NCBI RefSeq assembly: GCF_036588685.1
Contig: NC_086381.1
Span: 58,466,001 to 58,530,000 of the forward strand
Origin: Mytilus trossulus
Taxonomy: Eukaryota
Reading direction: 5' to 3'
Length of the DNA stretch: 64,000 nt
The notes below the pieces were generated by a model, which had not been told where the DNA came from, searched no databases, and saw nothing but the letters and a program-made list of their open reading frames with translations. The translations under genes and the position numbers were made by a program. Below, one piece after another: positions 2,800-31,700 of the stretch (the stretch's first letter is position 1; the number at the start of each line of letters is the position of its first letter).

Positions 2800-3270
2800 G
2801 TATTTCAGATATCGCAGATCAAATTTATTCTTTCATTGTTTAATCATACGTATTTTGATTGAGTTAAGTCTGCCAATTGATATTTTATCGTATGTTTTTC
2901 TATGTTGTGATGTCAAGCTATTGTTTCAGAAAAAGGGAGAAGGTTTGGATCCATTAAAACGTTTAATCCAGCTGCAAATGTTTGCACCTGTCCTAAGTCA
3001 GGAATCTGATGTACAGTAGTTGTCGTTTGTTTATGTAATATATACGTGTTTCTCGTTTTGTTTATATACATTTGTAGATTAGACCGTTGGTTTTCCCGTT
3101 TGAATGGTTTTACACTAGTAATTTTGGGGCCCTTTATAGCTTGTTGTTCGGTGTGAGCCAAGGCTCCGTGTTGAAGGCCATACTTTAACCTATAATGGTT
3201 AACTTTTTAAATTGTTATTTGGATGGAGAGTTGTCTCATTGGCACTCACACCACATCTTCCTATATCTAT
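2800..3270 (+). repeat. Interspersed repeat (inverted near-identical copy about 17668-18090; partial copy about 8390-8543)
   Basis: Long matching sequence between copies, ending GAGTTGTCTCATTGGCACTCACACCACATCTTCCTATATCTAT. Confidence 0.85.
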
Positions 3271-21930: not shown

Positions 21931-24900
21931 ATGGGTTGTTGTGATGGATTTGCTCGTTGTGTCCTTGTGACATTCAACATACTTTTTGTGGTAAGTACTT
22001 ATTATCAACTTTGAAGAATTGATGGTATAACGCTCGTTTGTGAACAAGATGAAAATGGGACTTTACGTACATAACTTCTAAAGAGAGAATGTTTGTACTT
22101 TGGATTCATATGTATTCGTTGGAAACCAATTTTCGTGGATTTTGAGGGTACTCGCGGAACAACAAAGTAAAATGTTGAACGAAATCGAATATCCTCGAAA
22201 ACGCAAGAAAATTGTAATACTCGAAAATAAATGATTCAACAGTATAGTTTTACCTACAAAGAATTCAGGTGACATACAAAATGATAAGAGAAGACATCAC
22301 AAACACGAAATTTTCTGTTTGCTTAATGATCATTATATTCTAGATCTAACTACAAGTCAGCAAGTAAAATTTTATAGACTCCTTTATTAAACAGTATATA
22401 GAACTGAGGATAGTGAACAATTAGCTATGGGTCGTTTGTATTGTTGTGCTGTGGACAATTAGTTATGGGTCTGTTGTGTCGTGTCGTGTCGTGTCTTGTT
22501 GTGTTGTGTAGTGTTGTGTTGTGTAGTGTTGTGTTGTGTTGTGTTGTTTTGTGTTGTGTCGTGTTGTGTTGTGTTTTGTGCATGTTTAATGTTTTATTTT
22601 TATTTGTGTAAACATAACGAAGGTGCGGTTGATTGTATTGTTGTTTGTATGTCATAATGCCTTTGTCTCCTTATGGATGTAATATACACTTTTAAAATAG
22701 AATAACATCATTAGCGAGCTACCATTTGATTTTTAGGGGGGGGGGGGGGGGGGGGGGGCTAGGATGAAATTTGAAAAAATAGGCAGGACAGGAGTTTTGA
22801 GTAAAAAAAAAAGGCAGGATGAGACACTTACAAAAAAAAAGTCAGGACGACAATTTAGGTCAAAAAATGTCAGGATAAACTAAAAAAAAAGAAGGTAGGA
22901 CCGAACAGAGTGAAAAATAAAAAGACAGGACAGAGATTACAGCTAAAAAAAAAATGCAGGACAAAATTTTTCATCCTAGCCCCTCCCCCTTCCCCTAAAA
23001 ATGAAATGGTAGCTCCCTTAACCGTAGGGAAAAAAATCACGATGTATTTTATAAATTCCTTTATGTTTCAGCTCACAGGTGTCTTTGTACTGGGTGTAGG
23101 AATATTTCTAAAAGTAAATCCTAATTTACTAAACATACAACATGTCATAGAACTGAACTCGGGAGACAAGTACATATCTACTGCTGCTTACATATTAATA
23201 GGCTTCGGTATATTCGTTTTGCTTGTCGGTCTGTTTGGTTTTATTGGTGGATGCAAGCAGATCAAATTCTTCTTGGCACTGGTAAGTTAACTAACAATGT
23301 GAAATGATAATACACAATGATCAATCTAGACAAAAAGTTTGTTGGTAATGCATCCTGGAAATTTAACTCCGACTTCGCCTCGGGTCAATATTCAACATAA
23401 CTAACGATTTCAGCACGACCTATATGGTCATGGTTTAAATACTTTATTATTCCCAAAACTTTGTGAACATATTTAGCCTTGTTAAAAAAAACCAAGGAAG
23501 ATCAAAGTTTTATGTACTAAATAAATAAATTAATAAACATTGTAGGTGATATTAATTTGGTCTCTGGTGAAGAGTTGTCTCATTGAGAATTTACTTGTAA
23601 AGCAGTTAAGAATTATTAAGGACTCACAATAAATGAAAGACTACAATTTCATTCATTTCATTTTCAGTACATGGGATGTGTTGTGCTTGTGTTCCTTGGT
23701 GAATTTTCAGCAGGAATCATTGCTGCGGTTTACAAAGGCAAAGTAAGTTTTTTACAAGTTTGATTGATTGATAGATAGACAAATGAAAAAAATAAATATC
23801 AAAAGTTGTGCATTCGATATTCGTAAAGTAGTATAGGCAAATATATATTTATTTGACTAGCCTAAGAAACAGAAAGAAGAGTTAGGTTCGCCGAGCTGTT
23901 CTCTTGTTTTGTAGCGAGTATATATACACTTTATTATTCCCTACACAATAAGAATATATTTTAGCTTGCACTTTAACAATGAACTTAAAGATGTAGTTTT
24001 TTGTTCGTCCAATTTGTCCAATTTGTTGGTTTTTTCTTCATTAAATTAAATTACTAAAACGCAGACCACGACAGAGACCCCGCAACATTGCATTGAACTG
24101 TTATGTAAATAGTAGTTCGCTCGCAAAAGGAGAAAGATGTCAGTAGACTATGAAAAACAATAAAAGAATGGAAAAATGAATAATTAAAGAGGGACGGAAG
24201 ATACCAAAGGGATAGTCAAACTCATAAATCTAAAACAAACTGACAACGCCATGGCTAAAAATGAAAAAGACAAACAGAAAAACAATAGTACACATGAAAT
24301 ATGTCCCTTAATTATCTTTTTTGGGAATATTCATTATGTAATATTCATCATTCTTGCAAACAGTTATAAATATAAATATCATATAAAAAATGGAGAAAAA
24401 AAACAATAAAACAAAACAACAACGGTTTAGTCGAAATTAGATCTGTAATACTAGTTAACTGCTGTTAAATTCTCCCTCATAAATTCGTCCGAATCTAAAA
24501 CATTTCTAATCTATCTACATGGCGAAATAAGAGGCAAGACACGTAAAAAATGTAGGTTTGGTTTGCTCGCAGTAACTTCGAGACTTTTATATAGATACTA
24601 TCCAACCAGTTCTTCAACTTGTTCTACAAACCACGGTTACTATAAAGATAGAAATAGATAAGGGAAAAACCCAAATATAACGGAATAGAAATAAATAAAC
24701 ATTCCAGAAAGAATTTGAGGTAAAAATAACAAACTCTTCCCATTAATGACTGCATCAACAAATGGCAATTGCATATAGTATTATAACGTTTCAAACGTTG
24801 ACTACACTATTTTGTTTGTTTTAGGTAGACGACACGCTACAAACTGTATTAAGAGAATCTCTTTCGGAGTATGATTCGAAAAATAAGACAAGTGAACTGG

Positions 24901-27900
24901 TCAATAAAGGATGGGACGGGATCCAGAGCTGGGTAATTACAAAGACCAATGAATATAGACCTAAAAAAATAATTGTGTACTTTTGCTTCTTTAAATTTCG
25001 CTAAAACTGATATCATGTAGAATCATCAATATAGTTCTTTATTTCGGATTTAGAAACAAAAGTTATGCAGTACCGACCGTGCAAGAACTTCTTGAGGAGT
25101 CAAGATCGTCATAAAAACTCTTCGTAAATTAAGATATCCAGAAATTTTATCTGGAAATATGATTGATTGCTTTTTTTTATTATGTTTAACGCTACTTCGT
25201 GGCTGCCATTTTTTATTTTTTATAAAGAAGCAAGCCGAAGTTCCCGGAGAGTACCCCCGTCCTTCGGCAGGAACAATGGCAATCCTAGTCAGTTAATGAT
25301 TTACGCACTAATAATTTGAATAATATATTCACAAGGATACACTACGTTTTAAATTACCACTGAAAGTTACAAGATGTAAGAAAATGTACTGTAAAAATGG
25401 GGAATATGTCAAAGTGAACAACCCGACCAAAGTGCAGATAACAGCCGAAGTCCACCAATGCGTCTTCAACGAGGCGAGAAAAGTCCGTAACTCGGAGGAG
25501 GTCTTTAGCTGGCCCCTAAATAAAATTAGGTAATACTTCAGTAAAAATGGACGCCACACTTAACTCCAATTTTTTTTGCAAGACTTACAAAAGCCAGAGG
25601 ATCCTGACTTAAGTTGGAACAGGCGCAAAAAAGCGTTACTTTTTTATGTTAAAAAAACTTAAATTGTAATAGAGTCATGTGATGATTCCGTTTGAACTAC
25701 AGACAAGAAGCTGCCATATCTATCACGACGCCCCATTTTTCTTTTTCAGTTAAAATGTTGTGGCGAACGCAACTTTACAGATTACACTGTTATGAAAATA
25801 CCGCTTGCTGATGACGTAAGTTAACATAATACATCCCGTGAAATTTATTTCCGATGACTTCATTGATACGTCTATATATATATAGAACAGGATTTCCCTA
25901 TTTCGTTAGATATGGATCCGGATTTTTCATTTCTTTTAATGTAAAAAGAGTATCCTTCAAACAAAGATCTGATTGGTTGATATAGTCGTGAAGATACACA
26001 ATAGGTGAAACAAGAAGAGAGGCTAAAGATACCATAGGGATATTCAAATTCAGAAGTCGTCGAAAACTAACTGACAATGCCATGGCTTAAAAACGGAAAA
26101 CGACAAAAAGACGCATGCACAAAACACAAAATAAACTGAGCAAAAACACGAACCCAATCAAAACTGTGGATGATGTTTGGTCCTCCACAAGGGTAAGATA
26201 AGTGGTTGTAATCACCCTTTTGAGCAAACTGGAAACAAAAATATGTTAGATTGACTGTTGCAGAATGTCAAAGCGGCCGCAAATTTTACGTACATATTCA
26301 AGACTAACAAATTAAAATTAAATTCAATTAGTAGGTTCTGTAAAGTATGTCGACTGAGATAATAGGAGGAAACTTCGACTAGTGCTGGAAAATGAAGTAT
26401 ATATTGACATCAGGACCCCTGAATGAGTTGTTGCTGAGGTCCCTTAATCGTCTCCATTCATCCAAAATGAGTTAGCAATACTGAACTATAGCGACCATAC
26501 ATACAATCGCAATGAATGTACAATTGTGAAATCAATCTCCCTTACAGACAGAGTTATCGTCCTTTCCTCTTCATCGAGGGAGGGACAATTTAATTCTGTC
26601 TGTATGGGAGATTGATTGTAAATACTAGTAGATTCAATAGATACTTCCGTTATATCTGAAATAACCATTGGATTGAATAGCATTTATAAGATTAAAAGCT
26701 ATAACAATTCTTACTGGATAGATGTAAAACTTTTTTAGAAACTTGTTCCGGATTCATGTTGTGGGTCAAATAAACAGGAATGCCAAAAAGAAGCAAAGGC
26801 AAAAGTAAAACCATTTAAAAACTTGTATGACCAGGTAAGTCCGAAACTAACAGTTAGTCTATTTACGATTAGTACAGGCAATGTTTATGCTGAAAGTTGA
26901 AACTCCATTACTTAAAGACGACCGTTAAAGGTGTGACTTAAGTTTGAAAACAATGATTCAATTTATCTTACTTTGTGGTTATAGTTTGAATGCCATATGG
27001 TTTTGCAGTGGCGGATCCAGAACTTTTCCTAAGGGGGGCCGCTGACTGACCTAAGAGGGGGCCCGTTCAAGTCATGCTTCAATGATTCCCTATATAATCA
27101 ACCAAATTTTTCCCACGAAAAGGGGGTGGCCGGCCCCCCCCCCCCCCCCCCCCAGACCCCCCTGTGGATCCGCCTATGGAATGATATACCGTTATTGCTT
27201 GACTATAAACTTAAGATTGGGTATCATTGGGAATAAGATTCAAGTTTTAAAGTGTTTGAACTGTAGATTGAAAATCGTAGCCTTGGAATTTAGGCTTGCT
27301 GTTTGACTTTAGTTCGGATACCATAAGTATGAAATTTAGAATTTTATGTTTTCGGCTTTGTGACTTTAATCATAACAATCTGGCAAGTATGTAGTTTATG
27401 TCTTAATGTTATTTATATTATGTGACTGTAGTTGAATGCCACAAATATGAAATTTAGGATAAAAAAGCTTTTTTTACTCAAGTTTGGTTGTGTGCATTTA
27501 TCTATCTTTTTTTCTTTGTACCACGTTGTTGAGGTCGTCATGCAAGTGAGATTAATTTTGTACGCTATAAATGATTCATATACAATTATACAACATACTT
27601 AGTCACCACTGTGATAGGTTTTTGACATCGATTATAGATTCCCTTTAAAAATTGCCTCTATATGTTTTACGGATATTTTTTTTCAGGGTTGTTATGATCA
27701 AATGGAAAACCAAATAAAGTCTCACATTACCCTTCTGATAGGTGCAGGAGTTGGTGTAGCCATGTTTCAGGTGAGAACAGATAAAATCACAATTACAGTT
27801 TTTTAGTTTCGTATTTTTTTCTTATAACGTATCTGTGTTTAACTAGAGTCAATTTCTGTGTCTTTATAAAAAACATAATTATAGTTTATTTTCCTTGTTA

Positions 27901-28406
27901 CAGCTTTGTGAATAGATAAGTAATTAATGGAAAGTTGATGACGCAAAAGGAAATAGTCCCTAATGTAAACAGATTGATCCAAAGTATTGAAGTTTTGGAA
28001 AGGATTTTTTTTGTTTTAGTTTTTAGAATTTGGAAACGAGAGTAAGAAAGTATTTGCAATTAGAGTTATCTCTCTTTGATCGAAAAGCTGATAAATATTT
28101 TATTTACCTCTGCATTTATTTCAGTTGCTTGGTATATTTTTGGCCTGTGCAGCATGGAAGCGGAGTGGAGATGATGATATTATTTAAATTTACCTACTTT
28201 TCTATTATTATGGTTTTGGTGAGATGTTTTGTGTATTGTACTGAAATGATAAAACACTAAAGTATACTAACGAATTGTATAGAAATAACGTAAATAATTG
28301 TTTATCATTTTTAATTCATTGCTATTATTTTGAATTTCAGTTACTTGGTATATTTTTGGCATGTGCCGCTTGGAAAAAAAGTGACGATGATGACCTAAGA
28401 GTTTAA
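21931..28406 (+). CDS. Tetraspanin, about 253-254 aa, 8 coding exons with alternative last exon
   Basis: Exons 21931-21990, 23072-23281, 23668-23742, 24825-24932, 25750-25815, 26739-26834, 27687-27770, then 28125-28187 or 28341-28406. All introns are GT-AG and phase 0. Four TM segments; the large extracellular loop has the CCG motif (LKCCG), PDSCC, a lone C and the GC before TM4 (6-Cys type). N-terminus is MGCC. A likely non-coding first exon ends near 20108 (CCG|GTAAG). Confidence 0.92.
22472..22578. repeat. (GTGTT/GTGTC)n pentanucleotide microsatellite in a tetraspanin intron
   Basis: Directly visible. Confidence 0.9.
22714..23017. mobile_element. PIF/Harbinger-type MITE with TTA TSD in a tetraspanin intron
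   Basis: GCGAGCTACCATTTGATTTTTAGGGG...CTAGGATGAAA versus TTTCATCCTAGCCCC...CTAAAAATGAAATGGTAGCTCCC; TTA on both sides; internal CAGGA repeats. Confidence 0.82.
28125..28187 (+). CDS. Tetraspanin last exon, variant A (LLGIFLACAAWKRSGDDDII*)
   Basis: Acceptor TTTATTTCAG, in frame with exon 7; completes TM4 and the cytoplasmic tail; TAA stop. Confidence 0.82.
   Translation: MLGIFLACAAWKRSGDDDII
28341..28406 (+). CDS. Tetraspanin last exon, variant B (LLGIFLACAAWKKSDDDDLRV*)
   Basis: Acceptor GAATTTCAG, in frame with exon 7; paralogue of variant A; TAA stop; candidate polyA signal ATTAAA near 28590. Confidence 0.82.
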   Translation, partial: LLGIFLACAAWKKSDDDDLRV

Positions 28407-28773
28407 CTGTGTTGATATTTCTTACAAAACTGTTTTTTTTATTTGAATTGTTATGAAATATGAATATATTCTTTTACAAAGATATGCATGTAAATTGTTA
28501 GTTAGTATGGTTTGATAGTTGAAATTAAAGAACATTAGGTTTTTATATTTTTCGTTGTAAGATTTGGCTGTGATCTGTTGAGTTTTGTAATTAAAATTTA
28601 TTGAAATACATCGGAGTTTGTGAATGAATGATCTTTATTCTCATAAACCAAATACATAGTTACAGAGAAGATATTACAATAATATATATAACATATATAA
28701 GATATAGCATGTGTGAAATACAAAATTAATATGATAAATATTTACACAAATGATAAATAAACATATAGTTGTA

Positions 28774-31700
28774 TTAACCAGGAGGATAGACTTTCACAGA
28801 AATAGATTTAATAAATCTACAAAGTTTCTCAAGTTCAACAATATTTTGGGTTGAACATACTTGTTTGAATTTGATAACATTTATATTTTTAATACAATAA
28901 TGAGGTAAGTATTTGCATCTTTCATCTTTGAAATAATTACAAGACATGATATAATGGTTTTCATCACCAATGTCAGCTGAGCCACAAAGGTGACACAATC
29001 TTTCAGATCTTGGTATGTTGCGCCACCTTCCCGTCTCAATGGGCAAACGGTTATTCCCACATCTAAATTTACATAAGGTTATTAATAAATTAAATGGTAG
29101 AACTGATAAATAGTGTTCAAATTTAAAAACATTTTTGTACAATCTATAACACAGCCCCTTGGGCGAAGTGTTCATTTCTGTTGACCATTCTTGAATGAAC
29201 TGATCTCTTAATCTTTGCTGAACACTCAATACAACCCAACGTTTCTCAAATAAGTTGTGACTTTGCCATATATTTGACATTCCACAGTCATCAAAAATTT
29301 TCTTTATATATAATATCCATTTACTATCATAACCATAGTTATTAAAATTTACATATAACAGCTTATATAATAAACATGATATTTTGCTCTCTTTTCCTTC
29401 TTGTAAACGACACCAGAAATTAATCATACGTGACTTGACGGTAACAGAAATGGGACATCTTCCCAATTCCCCATAGACCATAAAATTGGGGGTCGATTTT
29501 TTTAACCTCAATATATGTTTGCAAAAACGCAAATGAACTCTCTCAAGAATATCTAAATTTTCGAATCCCCATATCTCACACCCATAAGTTAGTATAGGAA
29601 CAATAGCCTTATCAAACATATCGAGTTGGCACTCGATCGACAAGTTATTTAATCTGGATTTTTTTATCACAGCATACATTGCTTTAATCGCCTGGTCACG
29701 AAGATATTTTCTGGTGGAAAGAAACGAGCCACTTCTAGAAAATACAATACCAAGATATTTATAACTACTGACTATCTCAATTTCATTTCCATCTATATTA
29801 AATAATAAGTTTCTAGGTATTCTACCTTTTGAGAATATCATAATTTTCGTTTTATTTATATTAATTTTCAATTTCCATTGTTTGCATATACTCTGAAAAT
29901 TTGTCCAACATACATTGTAAATCATGGCTAGATTCAGAAAGTAGTATTGTATCATCAGCATACAATAACAGAAAAAATTTAAAATATACAAAAAGTTCAT
30001 TTTCAATATCTTTTGTTACAGACTGTATTCCTTCAATATTAGAGTTTTCTAAAAATTCTTGTAAATCATTTAGATACAGGGAGAAAAGCAAAGGAGAAAG
30101 GTTTTCCCCTTGTCTAACTCCTGTTTCACAAGCAAAAATATCAGAAACTTCTGAATTATGAACAATTTTAGATTTGACATCATCATACATATTTTTAATA
30201 ATTCTTAGAAATTTTCCGTTCACATGGTTTAATATTAGTTTAAAAAATAATGAGTTTCGATGGATAAAATCAAAAGCTTTTTCGAAGTCGACAAATACAC
30301 AAAATAATTTCTTCTTTTTCACCCGCAATAATTCAAATAAAGCATGTAATGAAAAAACATGATCTGTTGTGGAATAACCTTGCCGGAAACCTGCTTGGTT
30401 TTCGTTTAAGATGTTATAATTTTCAATAAAATCCCCAAGTCTGTCGTTAAGAATTGAAGTGAAAACTTTCCCAAGACAAGACAAAAGTGTAATCGGTCTA
30501 TAATTTTTGGCGTCTAATTTACTCCCCTTGTTTTTGAAAATAGGTATGACATTTCCAATAAGCCAAGCCTCAGGCAAGATTCCCGTATCAAATACAATAT
30601 TAAATAAATATACATAAATATCAACCATACAATCAAGAGAAGAAGCAATATATTCATTAATTACTTGGTCTTCACCCGGTGATTTATTATTTTTAGCTTT
30701 TTTTACAGCTTTCAAAATTTCCTCCCGGGTTATTGGACAATTCAAATTTTCATTTACTGTATCAGAATTTACATCGTTTTCTATCAAAAACTCATTTTCG
30801 AACTTATTTTTGTTTAAGTCCTTGAAAAAATCAAATAAATTTTGCAGTGAAATATTGCTTTTCCCTCTTTTTCTACCTCTATTGAACAATTTCCAAAAAT
30901 TCTTTGGGATTTTTTGTTTTCAATCCCTTCATCTTTTTACTCATTTCAGTATTATGATTCTTGATATTAACATCCATAACTTTTTTATAATGCAATTCAC
31001 TTTGTCTAAGTCGTTCTTTAAAAATGTTCGACCCATAATGTTTGTATAACCTCTGAGATTTTCTAAATTCTCGTTGCGCTTTTTTACAATCTTTATTGTA
31101 CCAGTCTTTACTAAACTGGTTCTTTGAGCACTTAAACATAGTTTTATTAAATGTCGAAGTTCCGAATGTTGCCTTGGCAGATTCGGTTAAAGTATCACAC
31201 ATATCAGTAACAATGTTATTCATATCATATTTAGTAACATTATTTACATCATTTACATATGCAGACAATCTATTACATATATCATCAACCTTATTTCTAT
31301 CTATATTGTTCTTATACTCATTACATTTTTCATTTTTCCATTTATTTACTCTTTCGTCACCACAACAAAGTGTTTCTGTTAACAATTTGTCTTGTATGTC
31401 ATTATTTGTATACAATTGAAGAGACAAAGGAGAGTGTACATCTGAAAATAGTTTACAAAAATTTAACACTTCAAGTTTACAAATGTTGTATAAAAAATGA
31501 GTAGAACTCAACGCATAGTCAATAACGCTAGAATTTCTACTAGTTGGACTACCTGTTTTGTTTTCTTCCAGTCTACCGTTAAGAATAAACATTCTGTTAT
31601 TTTTACAAAAATCAATAAATTTTCTTCCATACCCATTTACTACAGTTTCTATACTATTTCTCAGTCTTGGTATACCAAGTTCATCTAAAACATCAACATC

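What the first reader, a model, noticed from the sequence alone, without database searches (positions are those of the whole stretch)
28115..28410. Tetraspanin with tandem-duplicated alternative last exons that swap the C-terminal tail (-DDII vs -DLRV): candidate PDZ-ligand switch
Seen: two paralogous terminal exons 216 bp apart, each with an intact TTTCAG acceptor, in frame with exon 7 and with its own stop. Over the first 12 codons (LLGIFLACAAWK) the protein is identical, yet five codons differ, all synonymously (TTG/TTA, GCC/GCA, GCA/GCC, GCA/GCT, AAG/AAA). Flanks show little similarity beyond the splice acceptor. That pattern points to purifying selection on both copies rather than a dead duplicate. 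Amino-acid differences are confined to the cytoplasmic tail (RSGDDDII vs KSDDDDLRV). Known: tetraspanin tails bind PDZ proteins (e.g. CD63-syntenin), and PDZ classes read the last 3-4 residues; D-I-I fits class III (D/E-x-hydrophobic) and L-R-V fits class II (hydrophobic-x-hydrophobic). Inference: choice of 3' splice site changes the scaffold or trafficking partner while leaving the rest of the protein unchanged.
Basis: partly seen in the sequence, partly recalled or inferred. Interest (0 to 1): 0.8.

Follow-up and report, generated by a model that had tools for sequence, protein, structure and literature searches.

The report
Mussel tetraspanin with duplicated last exon
A mussel tetraspanin gene carries two old, well-preserved copies of its last coding exon that would give the protein different tails, but in the RNA data examined only the downstream copy is spliced in.

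Summary
An eight-exon tetraspanin gene (CDS 21931-28406, + strand) has two copies of its last coding exon. Exon 8a is 28125-28187 and ends -RSGDDDII. Exon 8b is 28341-28406 and ends -KSDDDDLRV. Both follow ATTTCAG and are in frame with exon 7.

Their shared 12 codons differ at 5 sites, all synonymous (pS 0.63, P about 5e-4). A paralogous gene 4.9 Mb away has the same pair. Between the paralogs, 8a shows 1 synonymous change in 63 nt, while neutral divergence is about 15%. So 8a has been kept as coding sequence for a long time.

The alternative splicing itself was not seen. Of four RNA runs, three were informative and all join exon 7 to 8b (16 reads in the raw-read run, against 15 for the exon 6-7 junction). 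No 7-to-8a junction appeared.

There is no AATAAA or ATTAAA between the copies, but a conserved TTG|GTGAGA donor lies 31 nt past 8a's stop. If 8a is used, it is therefore more likely a 94-nt cassette than a terminal exon.

The PDZ-switch idea remains untested. A second tetraspanin gene on contig 6 has a similar pair (-GRDSIV and -GREE). This is a new member of a known kind, like KRAS 4A/4B.

The parts
21931..21990 (+). Exon 1 coding part (MGCCDGFARCVLVTFNILFV), donor GTG|GTAAGT
   Evidence: matches P0035 residues 1-20
23072..23281 (+). Exon 2 (70 aa, TM1 to TM2)
   Evidence: PF00335 gives 31 bits over profile positions 14-77
23668..23742 (+). Exon 3 (25 aa, TM3)
24825..24932 (+). Exon 4 (36 aa, start of the large extracellular loop)
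25750..25815 (+). Exon 5 (22 aa, holds the CCG motif)
   Evidence: 100% to P0035
26739..26834 (+). Exon 6 (32 aa, holds PDSCC)
   Evidence: The junction 26834->27687 is seen in X24 (15 reads), X1 and X3
27687..27770 (+). Exon 7 (28 aa, first half of TM4), donor CAG|GTGAGA
27771..28124 (+). Intron 7 upstream of 8a. It is 85.5% identical to the paralog
   Evidence: It is covered only by low-depth unspliced contigs (X3 depth 29, X1 depth 10.8)
28125..28187 (+). Exon 8a coding part with stop (LLGIFLACAAWKRSGDDDII*). It is intact and conserved. No spliced read was found
28188..28218 (+). 31 nt between the 8a stop and the candidate donor. This would be the 3' end of a 94-nt cassette exon (28125-28218)
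   Evidence: inferred, with no junction seen
28219..28224 (+). Candidate 5' splice site TTG|GTGAGA. Its six intronic bases are the same as exon 7's donor, and it is kept in the paralog
   Evidence: X1's contig has no difference here: all 12 of its differences are listed and none falls at this site
28225..28340 (+). Rest of the spacer up to the 8b acceptor. It holds no AATAAA or ATTAAA
   Evidence: The whole spacer 28188-28340 is 90.8% identical to the paralog, with 11 gap columns
28341..28406 (+). Exon 8b coding part with stop (LLGIFLACAAWKKSDDDDLRV*). This is the copy used in all informative RNA runs
   Evidence: The database model P0035 also uses it
28407..28608 (+). 3' UTR after 8b, with ATTAAA at 28524 and 28590. 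The X1 contig ends at 28608 and the X3 contig at 28531

Best explanation
The last coding exon of a Mytilus tetraspanin was duplicated in tandem long ago. This exon encodes the second half of TM4 plus the short cytoplasmic tail. Both copies have since been kept as coding sequence. That part is shown. Exon 8b is the default end of the mRNA in the RNA data examined. That part is also shown. Exon 8a is most likely included only in some tissue, stage or condition that these runs did not sample. That part is inferred from selection. When included, 8a probably acts as a 94-nt cassette (28125-28218) between exon 7 and 8b. Its own stop codon, 31 nt before the next junction, ends the protein at -RSGDDDII and turns 8b into 3' UTR. 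Skipping 8a gives -KSDDDDLRV. The cassette mode is inferred from the splice signals. The result is a swap of the last 8 or 9 cytoplasmic residues with the rest of the protein unchanged. This would plausibly change sorting or scaffold binding, but that is speculative.
For: The duplicate is real. 8a and 8b differ by 5 synonymous and 0 non-synonymous changes over the 12 shared TM codons. pS is 0.625, near saturation, and P is 5.4e-4. Over 18 codons pS is 0.74 and pN is 0.069. A paralogous gene at G000:C9:63.41 Mb has all nine exons in the same order. Across E1-E7 the two genes differ by 23 synonymous and 4 non-synonymous nucleotide changes, giving pS 0.149 and dN/dS 0.044. In contrast, 8a differs by 1 synonymous change in 63 nt, and 8b by 2 synonymous changes in 66 nt, with identical peptides and stops. 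P(<=1 of 63 at 14.9%) is 4.6e-4, and P(0 of 50 non-synonymous sites) is 3.1e-4. Only 17 of 7413 intronic 63-column windows are as conserved as 8a, and none of them is in intron 7 or the spacer. The organism A contig in X1 carries 8a with one change, ATT>ATC, which is synonymous. For the cassette anatomy: the 8a acceptor has 15 of 20 pyrimidines, against 13 of 20 for 8b. The donor TTG|GTGAGA is kept in the paralog. No AATAAA or ATTAAA lies in 28188-28340. For 8b as the default: the 27770->28341 junction is seen as 16 reads in X24, against 15 for the constitutive 26834->27687 junction. It is also seen in an X1 contig of depth 615, and X3's loose end reads TTACTTGGT, which is 8b's first nine bases.
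Against: No read or contig joins 27770 to 28125 or 28218 to 28341 in any of the four runs. The 8a bin has depth 0.86 in X24, against 14.6 for the 8b bin. In X1 and X3, 8a is covered only by unspliced contigs at 2-3% of the spliced depth. The only database model of this gene (P0035) uses 8b. Two protein searches that could have found an 8a-type tail found none, although one of them also missed P0035. The tissues of the runs are unknown. One raw-read run (X21) hardly expresses the gene. A junction is listed only from 3 reads upward, so up to about 10% inclusion in X24 would go unseen. The selection tests rest on short sequences of 12 to 21 codons.
Confidence: 0.55

Rival explanations
1. 8a is an unused or no-longer-used duplicate (a pseudo-exon), and the gene makes only the -DLRV protein. 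Under this reading 8a's intactness is a leftover of past use or of some non-coding constraint.
For: Only the 7->8b junction is seen in the four runs. The only database model uses 8b. No 8a-type protein was found.
Against: A copy neutral since the duplication should carry about 8 non-synonymous differences in the TM part where 0 are seen (my estimate from the site counts). A copy neutral since the paralog split should show about 9 differences in 63 nt where 1 is seen. 8a is more conserved than 99.8% of intronic windows. Its acceptor, frame and stop are intact in the window, in the paralog and in the X1 contig.
Confidence: 0.2
2. 8a is a true alternative terminal exon. Under this reading transcripts end at a weak or non-canonical poly(A) site in the 153-nt spacer, and the choice is between two 3' splice sites each with its own 3' end.
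For: 8a has its own stop. The weak variants GATAAA (28248) and ACTAAA (28256) lie in the spacer. The human catalogue attributes most tandem-duplication C-terminal swaps to alternative poly(A) use (PMC8373072, passages).
Against: There is no AATAAA or ATTAAA between the copies, whereas two ATTAAA follow 8b. No pile-up of molecule ends was reported anywhere in the stretch (table 6). A strong conserved donor lies 31 nt after the stop.
Confidence: 0.12
3. The 8a stretch is conserved at the RNA level and not as protein. For example, it could be a decoy 3' splice site or a binding platform that slows removal of the last intron and so tunes the gene's output.
For: The interval 27771-28340 is retained at depth 29 (X3) and 10.8 (X1). 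The unique parts of intron 6 have depth 0 in X3 and at most 3.2 in X1.
Against: RNA-level constraint would not leave third codon positions free. All 5 differences between 8a and 8b, the one paralog difference and the one X1 difference are synonymous third-position changes. The inverted repeats flanking 8a are weak (17 nt, 76% complementary). By eye they are not kept in the paralog.
Confidence: 0.06

Closest known systems
KRAS exons 4A and 4B (vertebrates)
   Same: Two homologous last coding exons lie in tandem and swap only the C-terminal targeting region. One isoform dominates, and the pair is old. [quoted passage not shown] From recall: 4A carries its own stop and 4B then serves as 3' UTR, which is the cassette mode proposed here.
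   Different: The protein family is different (a small GTPase, not a four-pass membrane protein). The swapped part there is a lipidation and membrane-anchor region, not the end of a TM helix plus an 8-9 residue tail. Both KRAS isoforms are documented as RNA and protein. Here the 8a form has not been seen.
Tandem exon duplication-derived C-terminal substitutions in human genes (PMC8373072)
   Same: The catalogue lists 236 events, 77 of them at the C-terminus. It names NECTIN2, where both C-termini have a PDZ-binding motif, and the plasma-membrane calcium ATPases (passages). The evolutionary route is the same: duplication of the 3' coding exon followed by alternative use.
   Different: The words tetraspanin and TSPAN do not occur in its main text (0 occurrences each). 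Most events there are attributed to alternative poly(A) use. Here the signals favour a cassette.
Tetraspanin tails as PDZ ligands (CD63 and TSPAN6 with syntenin-1)
   Same: These are short cytoplasmic C-terminal tails of tetraspanins that recruit a PDZ scaffold and steer endosomal or exosomal traffic. I saw only the search listing and the starts of the abstracts of PMC5006017 and PMC5345265.
   Different: In those cases there is one tail per gene. The searches turned up no exon-level switch of a tetraspanin tail. Binding of -DDII or -DLRV to any PDZ domain is untested.
Second Mytilus tetraspanin gene at G000:C6:27.54 Mb (this genome)
   Same: It has two AG-preceded, in-frame, stop-ended copies of the TM4/tail exon 583 nt apart: LICVIFAFCLCAAIGRDSIV* and LLCVLFSFCLCVAIGREE*. 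They differ by 8 synonymous and 5 conservative non-synonymous changes over 17 codons.
   Different: The duplication looks independent, because the copies within each gene resemble each other more than they resemble copies in the other gene. A high-copy repeat sits between the copies. No paralog is available to test conservation, and no RNA was examined.

Membership tests
Tetraspanin (Pfam PF00335) | Significant match to the family profile | tested here: met
   P0035, the database protein that matches the window's exons in order, scores 113.5 bits, E 1.5e-32, over profile positions 78-223. Exon 2 alone scores 31 bits over positions 14-77, just under the 32.1-bit cut-off. The six-frame scan gives 31.9 bits at window 23042-23281, or 32.4 with its neighbours in the frame.
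Tetraspanin (Pfam PF00335) | Four hydrophobic segments, and a large loop with CCG and further paired cysteines | tested here: met
   Read directly from the exon translations. Hydrophobic runs lie in E1/E2, E2, E3 and E7/E8. CCG is in E5 (LKCCGERNF), PDSCC in E6 and GC at the start of E7. That these motifs define tetraspanins is recalled.
Tandem-duplicated alternative C-terminal exons (KRAS 4A/4B type) | Two homologous exons in tandem, each in frame with the upstream exon and ending in its own stop | tested here: met
Tandem-duplicated alternative C-terminal exons (KRAS 4A/4B type) | Both copies kept under purifying selection | tested here: met
   8a and 8b differ by 5 synonymous and 0 non-synonymous changes. 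The paralog shows 1 synonymous change in 8a and 2 in 8b, against pS 0.149 in E1-E7. The empirical intronic control gives 17 of 7413 windows as conserved.
Tandem-duplicated alternative C-terminal exons (KRAS 4A/4B type) | Both copies appear in mature mRNA, in alternative transcripts | tested here: inconclusive
   Only 7->8b was seen in the 3 informative runs of 4, and no 7->8a junction. The sample is small, the tissues are unknown, and the listing threshold is 3 reads.
PDZ-binding C-terminal motifs (class II hydrophobic-x-hydrophobic; class III D/E-x-hydrophobic) | The last three residues fit the class pattern | tested here: met
   -D-I-I and -L-R-V are read. The class definitions are recalled, not tested. 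Such three-residue patterns are common by chance.
PDZ-binding C-terminal motifs (class II hydrophobic-x-hydrophobic; class III D/E-x-hydrophobic) | Actual binding to a PDZ domain, with different partners for the two tails | not testable with these tools
   This needs peptide arrays or pull-downs.

The most novel reading that the evidence does not exclude
Tail-swapping through a duplicated last exon is a recurrent, selected device in mussel tetraspanins. Under this reading, at least two genes in this genome acquired it independently, and one of them then passed it to a daughter gene. The rarely used upstream copy would be switched on in a particular cell type or life stage, for example larvae, gametes or activated haemocytes. 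It would redirect the same tetraspanin to a different compartment or scaffold, for example from -DLRV to an acidic -DDDII end, and in the second gene from -GREE to a class-I-like -SIV end.
Probability: 0.25. Interest if true: 0.6.

Novelty: new member of a known kind. Interest (0 to 1): 0.4.

Why it matters
Tetraspanin tails are very short and still decide where the protein and its partners travel. A natural pair of isoforms that differ only in the last 8 or 9 residues would be a clean system for asking what the tail does. It would also add a membrane-organiser family to the short list of genes that use duplicated last exons (KRAS, PMCA and others). The evolutionary evidence here is strong enough to predict that the 8a isoform exists. 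That prediction is directly testable with a junction survey of existing mussel RNA-seq. If 8a is never spliced, the case becomes a puzzle of a different kind: an exon-like sequence kept under codon-level constraint without being expressed.

Tried and rejected
The metagenome scan with exon 2 returned two loci (L005, L006) at 46% identity, and these contain only a hydrophobic stretch and no tetraspanin gene. So "relatives" here means only a paralog in the same genome plus contigs of organisms A and B.

2. Protein searches for an 8a-type tail gave nothing.
- The 53-aa open frame around 8b found no candidate of 29-92 aa.
- The C-terminal region of the clam homologue P0007 found only 3 clam or Logan proteins. 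It missed P0035, which does hold matching words, so a blank from this tool is weak evidence.
- The exon 2 frame found P0072 (80 aa) and P0035.
- P0035's odd end (…DDDDLR then IDAITAEQTIP) is not encoded anywhere in the window. I take it for an ab initio artefact of an older draft assembly.

3. RNA looping as an explanation for skipping 8a. The inverted repeats around 8a are short, AT-rich and 76-83% complementary. By eye they are not kept in the paralog. I rejected this for lack of support.

4. Gene conversion as the cause of 8a's conservation is rejected.
- Between 8a and 8b it is ruled out by near-saturated synonymous divergence.
- Between the paralogs it is unlikely, because the flanks are 85-91% identical with indels while 8a is 98% identical.

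5. The survey for further duplicated last exons used a crude filter: AG, a pyrimidine tract, a hydrophobic start, and a stop within 45 codons.
- On the sense strand it gave 7 pairs in 22 sequences. Three were TM4-like (window, paralog, L016). Four were repeats or low complexity (L018, L019, L025, L026).
- The antisense control gave 400 pairs: 387 in one tandem array in L029, 10 in a repeat in the paralog locus, and 3 others.
- The filter alone is therefore not specific, and the classification was by eye.
- Only 20 of the 33 other tetraspanin hits were fetched, and only their first 10 kb. The figure of 1 in 20 is a lower bound.

6. The C6 gene's pair has no second copy in the genome. The search found only a high-copy repeat in its spacer.

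7. Papers. Searches found no paper describing a duplicated or alternative last exon in a tetraspanin. The supplementary tables of PMC8373072, which list all 236 human events, were closed and could hold one.

8. I did not build or search a joined spliced protein. Exons were searched one by one, and per-exon counts were summed.
Full report
**What is in the sequence.**
The stretch 27600-28700 shows exon 7 of a + strand gene, 27687-27770, with donor CAG|GTGAGA. It is followed by two look-alike short exons.
- Exon 8a begins at 28125 after ATTTCAG and reads LLGIFLACAAWKRSGDDDII, with its stop at 28185-28187.
- Exon 8b begins at 28341 after ATTTCAG and reads LLGIFLACAAWKKSDDDDLRV, with its stop at 28404-28406.
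- The repeat finder reports them as a 60-nt direct repeat, 83% identical, spaced 216 nt, starting 7 nt before each exon.

**The gene.**
Open frames and splice signals give eight coding exons, all in phase 0 and all with GT..AG introns:
- E1 21931-21990
- E2 23072-23281
- E3 23668-23742
- E4 24825-24932
- E5 25750-25815
- E6 26739-26834
- E7 27687-27770
- then 8a or 8b

The tetraspanin assignment is supported in three ways.
- A six-frame scan of the window's own genome with PF00335 hits exon 2. The genome is G000, 1.30 Gb in 541 contigs, and the window is C9:58466001-58530000.
- Exon 2 alone scores 31 bits.
- The database holds one protein model of this gene, P0035, named [quoted passage not shown]. 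It has 218 aa and scores 113.5 bits against PF00335.

P0035 matches my exons one after another at the boundaries given. E5 and E6 match at 100%, and the model continues from exon 7 into 8b, not 8a. So the animal is a Mytilus mussel. I did not determine which species. Exons were handled one at a time.

**Selection between the two copies.**
- Over the 12 shared codons there are 5 synonymous differences on 8.0 synonymous sites, and none on 28.0 non-synonymous sites. pS is 0.625, which is near saturation.
- Over 18 alignable codons pS is 0.74 and pN is 0.069.
- The chance that five random differences are all synonymous is 5.4e-4.
- Repeated gene conversion cannot produce this pattern, because conversion copies synonymous sites too.

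The duplication is therefore old, and for most of that time neither copy drifted as non-coding DNA.

**A paralogous gene gives a second, independent test.**
A DNA search of the genome with 28095-28420 found one other place, C9:63412247-63412563 on the minus strand. It is 91% identical across both exons and the spacer. The surrounding 14 kb holds all nine exons in the same order.
- Across E1-E7 the two genes differ by 23 synonymous and 4 non-synonymous nucleotide changes (3 amino acids), giving pS 0.149 and dN/dS 0.044. Both are therefore working genes that split well after the exon duplication.
- Introns are 61-92% identical, with many indels. Intron 7 is 85.5% identical. The 8a-8b spacer is 90.8% identical with 11 gap columns. 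The 3' UTR is 84.4% identical.
- Against this background, 8a differs by a single synonymous change (AAG>AAA) in 63 nt, and 8b by two synonymous changes in 66 nt. Peptides, stops and acceptors are identical.
- At 14.9% neutral divergence, P(<=1 of 63) is 4.6e-4. The 27-nt tail part of 8a alone gives P = 0.013.
- Empirically, only 17 of 7413 intronic 63-column windows are as conserved. All 17 lie in one patch of intron 1.
- Protein searches of the genome with the 8a and exon 7 peptides found such exons only in these two genes.

**RNA evidence.**
The look-up of sequencing runs listed 24 runs of two coded organisms, A and B. I laid two raw-read RNA runs (X21, X24; organism B) and two sets of contigs (X1, organism A; X3, organism B) on 26700-28800. 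I used 90% likeness and a 3% reporting share. The results are as follows.
- The constitutive 26834->27687 junction is seen as 15 reads from 8 starts in X24, one contig of depth 615 in X1, and two contigs of summed depth 947 in X3.
- The 27770->28341 junction (7->8b) is seen as 16 reads from 7 starts in X24 and in the same X1 contig. In X3 it shows as loose ends: TTACTTGGT behind 27770, which is 8b's first nine bases and not 8a's, and the end of exon 7 before 28335.
- No joint 27770->28125 and no joint 28218->28341 is listed in any run.
- X21 barely expresses the gene (depth 2 or less) and is uninformative.
- Depth over 8a in X24 is 0.86, against 14.6 over 8b.

A joint needs 3 reads to be listed, so inclusion up to roughly one in ten transcripts in X24 would escape. 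Contigs drop rare forms. The tissues are not known to me.

In X1 and X3, 8a is covered only by contigs that run unspliced through it.
- The X1 contig spans 27924-28364 at depth 10.8.
- The X3 contig spans 27741-28360 at depth 29.
- These depths are 2-3% of the spliced depth. The unique parts of intron 6 have depth 0 in X3 and at most 3.2 in X1.

These contigs also show that 8a is intact in both organisms.
- X1's contig has 12 differences, all listed. One is in 8a (28181 T>C, ATT>ATC, synonymous). None is at the acceptor or at 28213-28226.
- X3's contig has 14 differences. The 13 that are listed all lie outside 8a.

**How 8a would be used.**
- The 153 nt between the 8a stop and the 8b acceptor hold no AATAAA or ATTAAA, only GATAAA and ACTAAA. 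Two ATTAAA (28524, 28590) follow 8b, and the RNA contigs end at 28531 and 28608.
- Thirty-one nucleotides after the 8a stop lies TTG|GTGAGA (GT at 28219). Its six intronic bases are the same as those of exon 7's donor. It is kept in the paralog.
- The 8a acceptor tract (15 of 20 pyrimidines) is at least as good as 8b's (13 of 20).

The signals therefore describe a 94-nt cassette exon, 28125-28218. Including it would end the protein at -DDII and leave 8b as untranslated sequence. Its stop would lie 31 nt from the last junction. By the usual 50-55-nt rule (recalled) this should not trigger nonsense-mediated decay. This is the arrangement I recall for KRAS exon 4A. It is an inference here, since no such junction was seen.

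**What it might do.**
The swap is limited to the tail: RSGDDDII against KSDDDDLRV. Both keep a basic residue, a serine and an acidic run, and they differ at the very end. The acidic run followed by two bulky hydrophobic residues at the very C-terminus also recalls acidic-cluster dileucine sorting signals (recalled, and only a loose fit). Tetraspanin tails are known to recruit syntenin-1 (CD63, TSPAN6). For this I saw only the listing and the starts of the abstracts of PMC5006017 and PMC5345265. None of this can be tested with the tools at hand. Homologues from other bivalves end differently, for example -NSVY, -EHMA and -KYAV. The tail is therefore not a conserved motif of the subfamily.

**A second case in the same genome.**
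While checking other tetraspanin genes I found that the gene at C6:27.54 Mb also has two AG-preceded, in-frame, stop-ended copies of its TM4/tail exon, 583 nt apart.
- Copy A is L007 2672-2734 and reads LICVIFAFCLCAAIGRDSIV*.
- Copy B is L007 3255-3311 and reads LLCVLFSFCLCVAIGREE*.
- They differ by 8 synonymous and 5 non-synonymous changes over 17 codons (pS 0.69, pN 0.13). All five are conservative: I/L, I/L, A/S, A/V and D/E.
- A high-copy repeat sits in the spacer.

In a crude survey of the first 10 kb of 20 other tetraspanin loci, this was the only further case. Thirteen loci could not be fetched. The copies within each gene resemble each other more than they resemble copies across genes, so the two duplications look independent.

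**Comparison with what is known.**
Duplicated 3' coding exons that give homologous alternative C-termini are a known kind.
- A human catalogue counts 236 tandem-duplication substitutions, 77 of them C-terminal. They include KRAS, the PMCA pumps and NECTIN2, whose two ends both carry PDZ motifs (PMC8373072, passages).
- KRAS 4A/4B is described as alternative use of two homologous last exons (PMC9882654, passages).
- I found no paper that reports this for a tetraspanin. PMC8373072's main text has no occurrence of tetraspanin or TSPAN, and its supplements were closed.

**Verdict.**
The inference of purifying selection on both copies is well supported and is strengthened by the paralog. The claim of alternative splicing is not confirmed: the RNA examined uses 8b only. 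The anatomy is better read as a conditional cassette than as two terminal exons. The PDZ switch is an untested idea. This is a new member of a known kind, of moderate interest.

Noticed in passing
L007 2672-2734 and 3255-3311 (G000:C6:27549671-27549733 and 27550254-27550310): A second tetraspanin gene has a tandem-duplicated last coding exon with different tails (-GRDSIV* and -GREE*). The copies differ by 8 synonymous and 5 conservative non-synonymous changes. A high-copy repeat lies between them (L007 about 2923-3109).
   Followed up: partly
G000:C9:63412247-63419100, minus strand (L003 and L004): A full paralog of the window's tetraspanin gene lies 4.9 Mb away on the same contig. Against the window gene pS is 0.149 and dN/dS is 0.044, with 3 amino-acid differences (I33V in E4, D21G in E5, D31Y in E6). 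It has the same 8a/8b pair.
   Followed up: yes
window 27000-27190: A repeat in intron 6 is very highly covered in all four RNA runs (up to depth 43,561 in X1). The reads run on into unrelated sequence, so this is an expressed dispersed repeat and not part of this gene's mRNA.
   Followed up: no
window 27771-28340: The whole interval from exon 7 to 8b is retained in low-depth RNA contigs (X3 depth 29, X1 depth 10.8). The unique parts of intron 6 are at 0 in X3 and at most 3.2 in X1. The last intron may be removed slowly or be detained.
   Followed up: partly
L029 6786-8865 (G000:C3:74201328-74203407): A 104-nt unit is repeated 20.0 times at 96% identity behind another tetraspanin exon 2. The unit ends in ...CACAG|GTAAGG, so it looks like an exon end plus its donor.
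   Followed up: partly
window 28524-28608: Two ATTAAA signals lie at 28524 and 28590. The X3 contig ends at 28531 and the X1 contig at 28608. This could mean tandem poly(A) sites, or only contig breaks at polymorphisms.
   Followed up: no
window 22033-22111: This is the only intronic patch (in intron 1) as conserved between the two paralogs as exon 8a: at most 1 difference per 63 columns.
   Followed up: no
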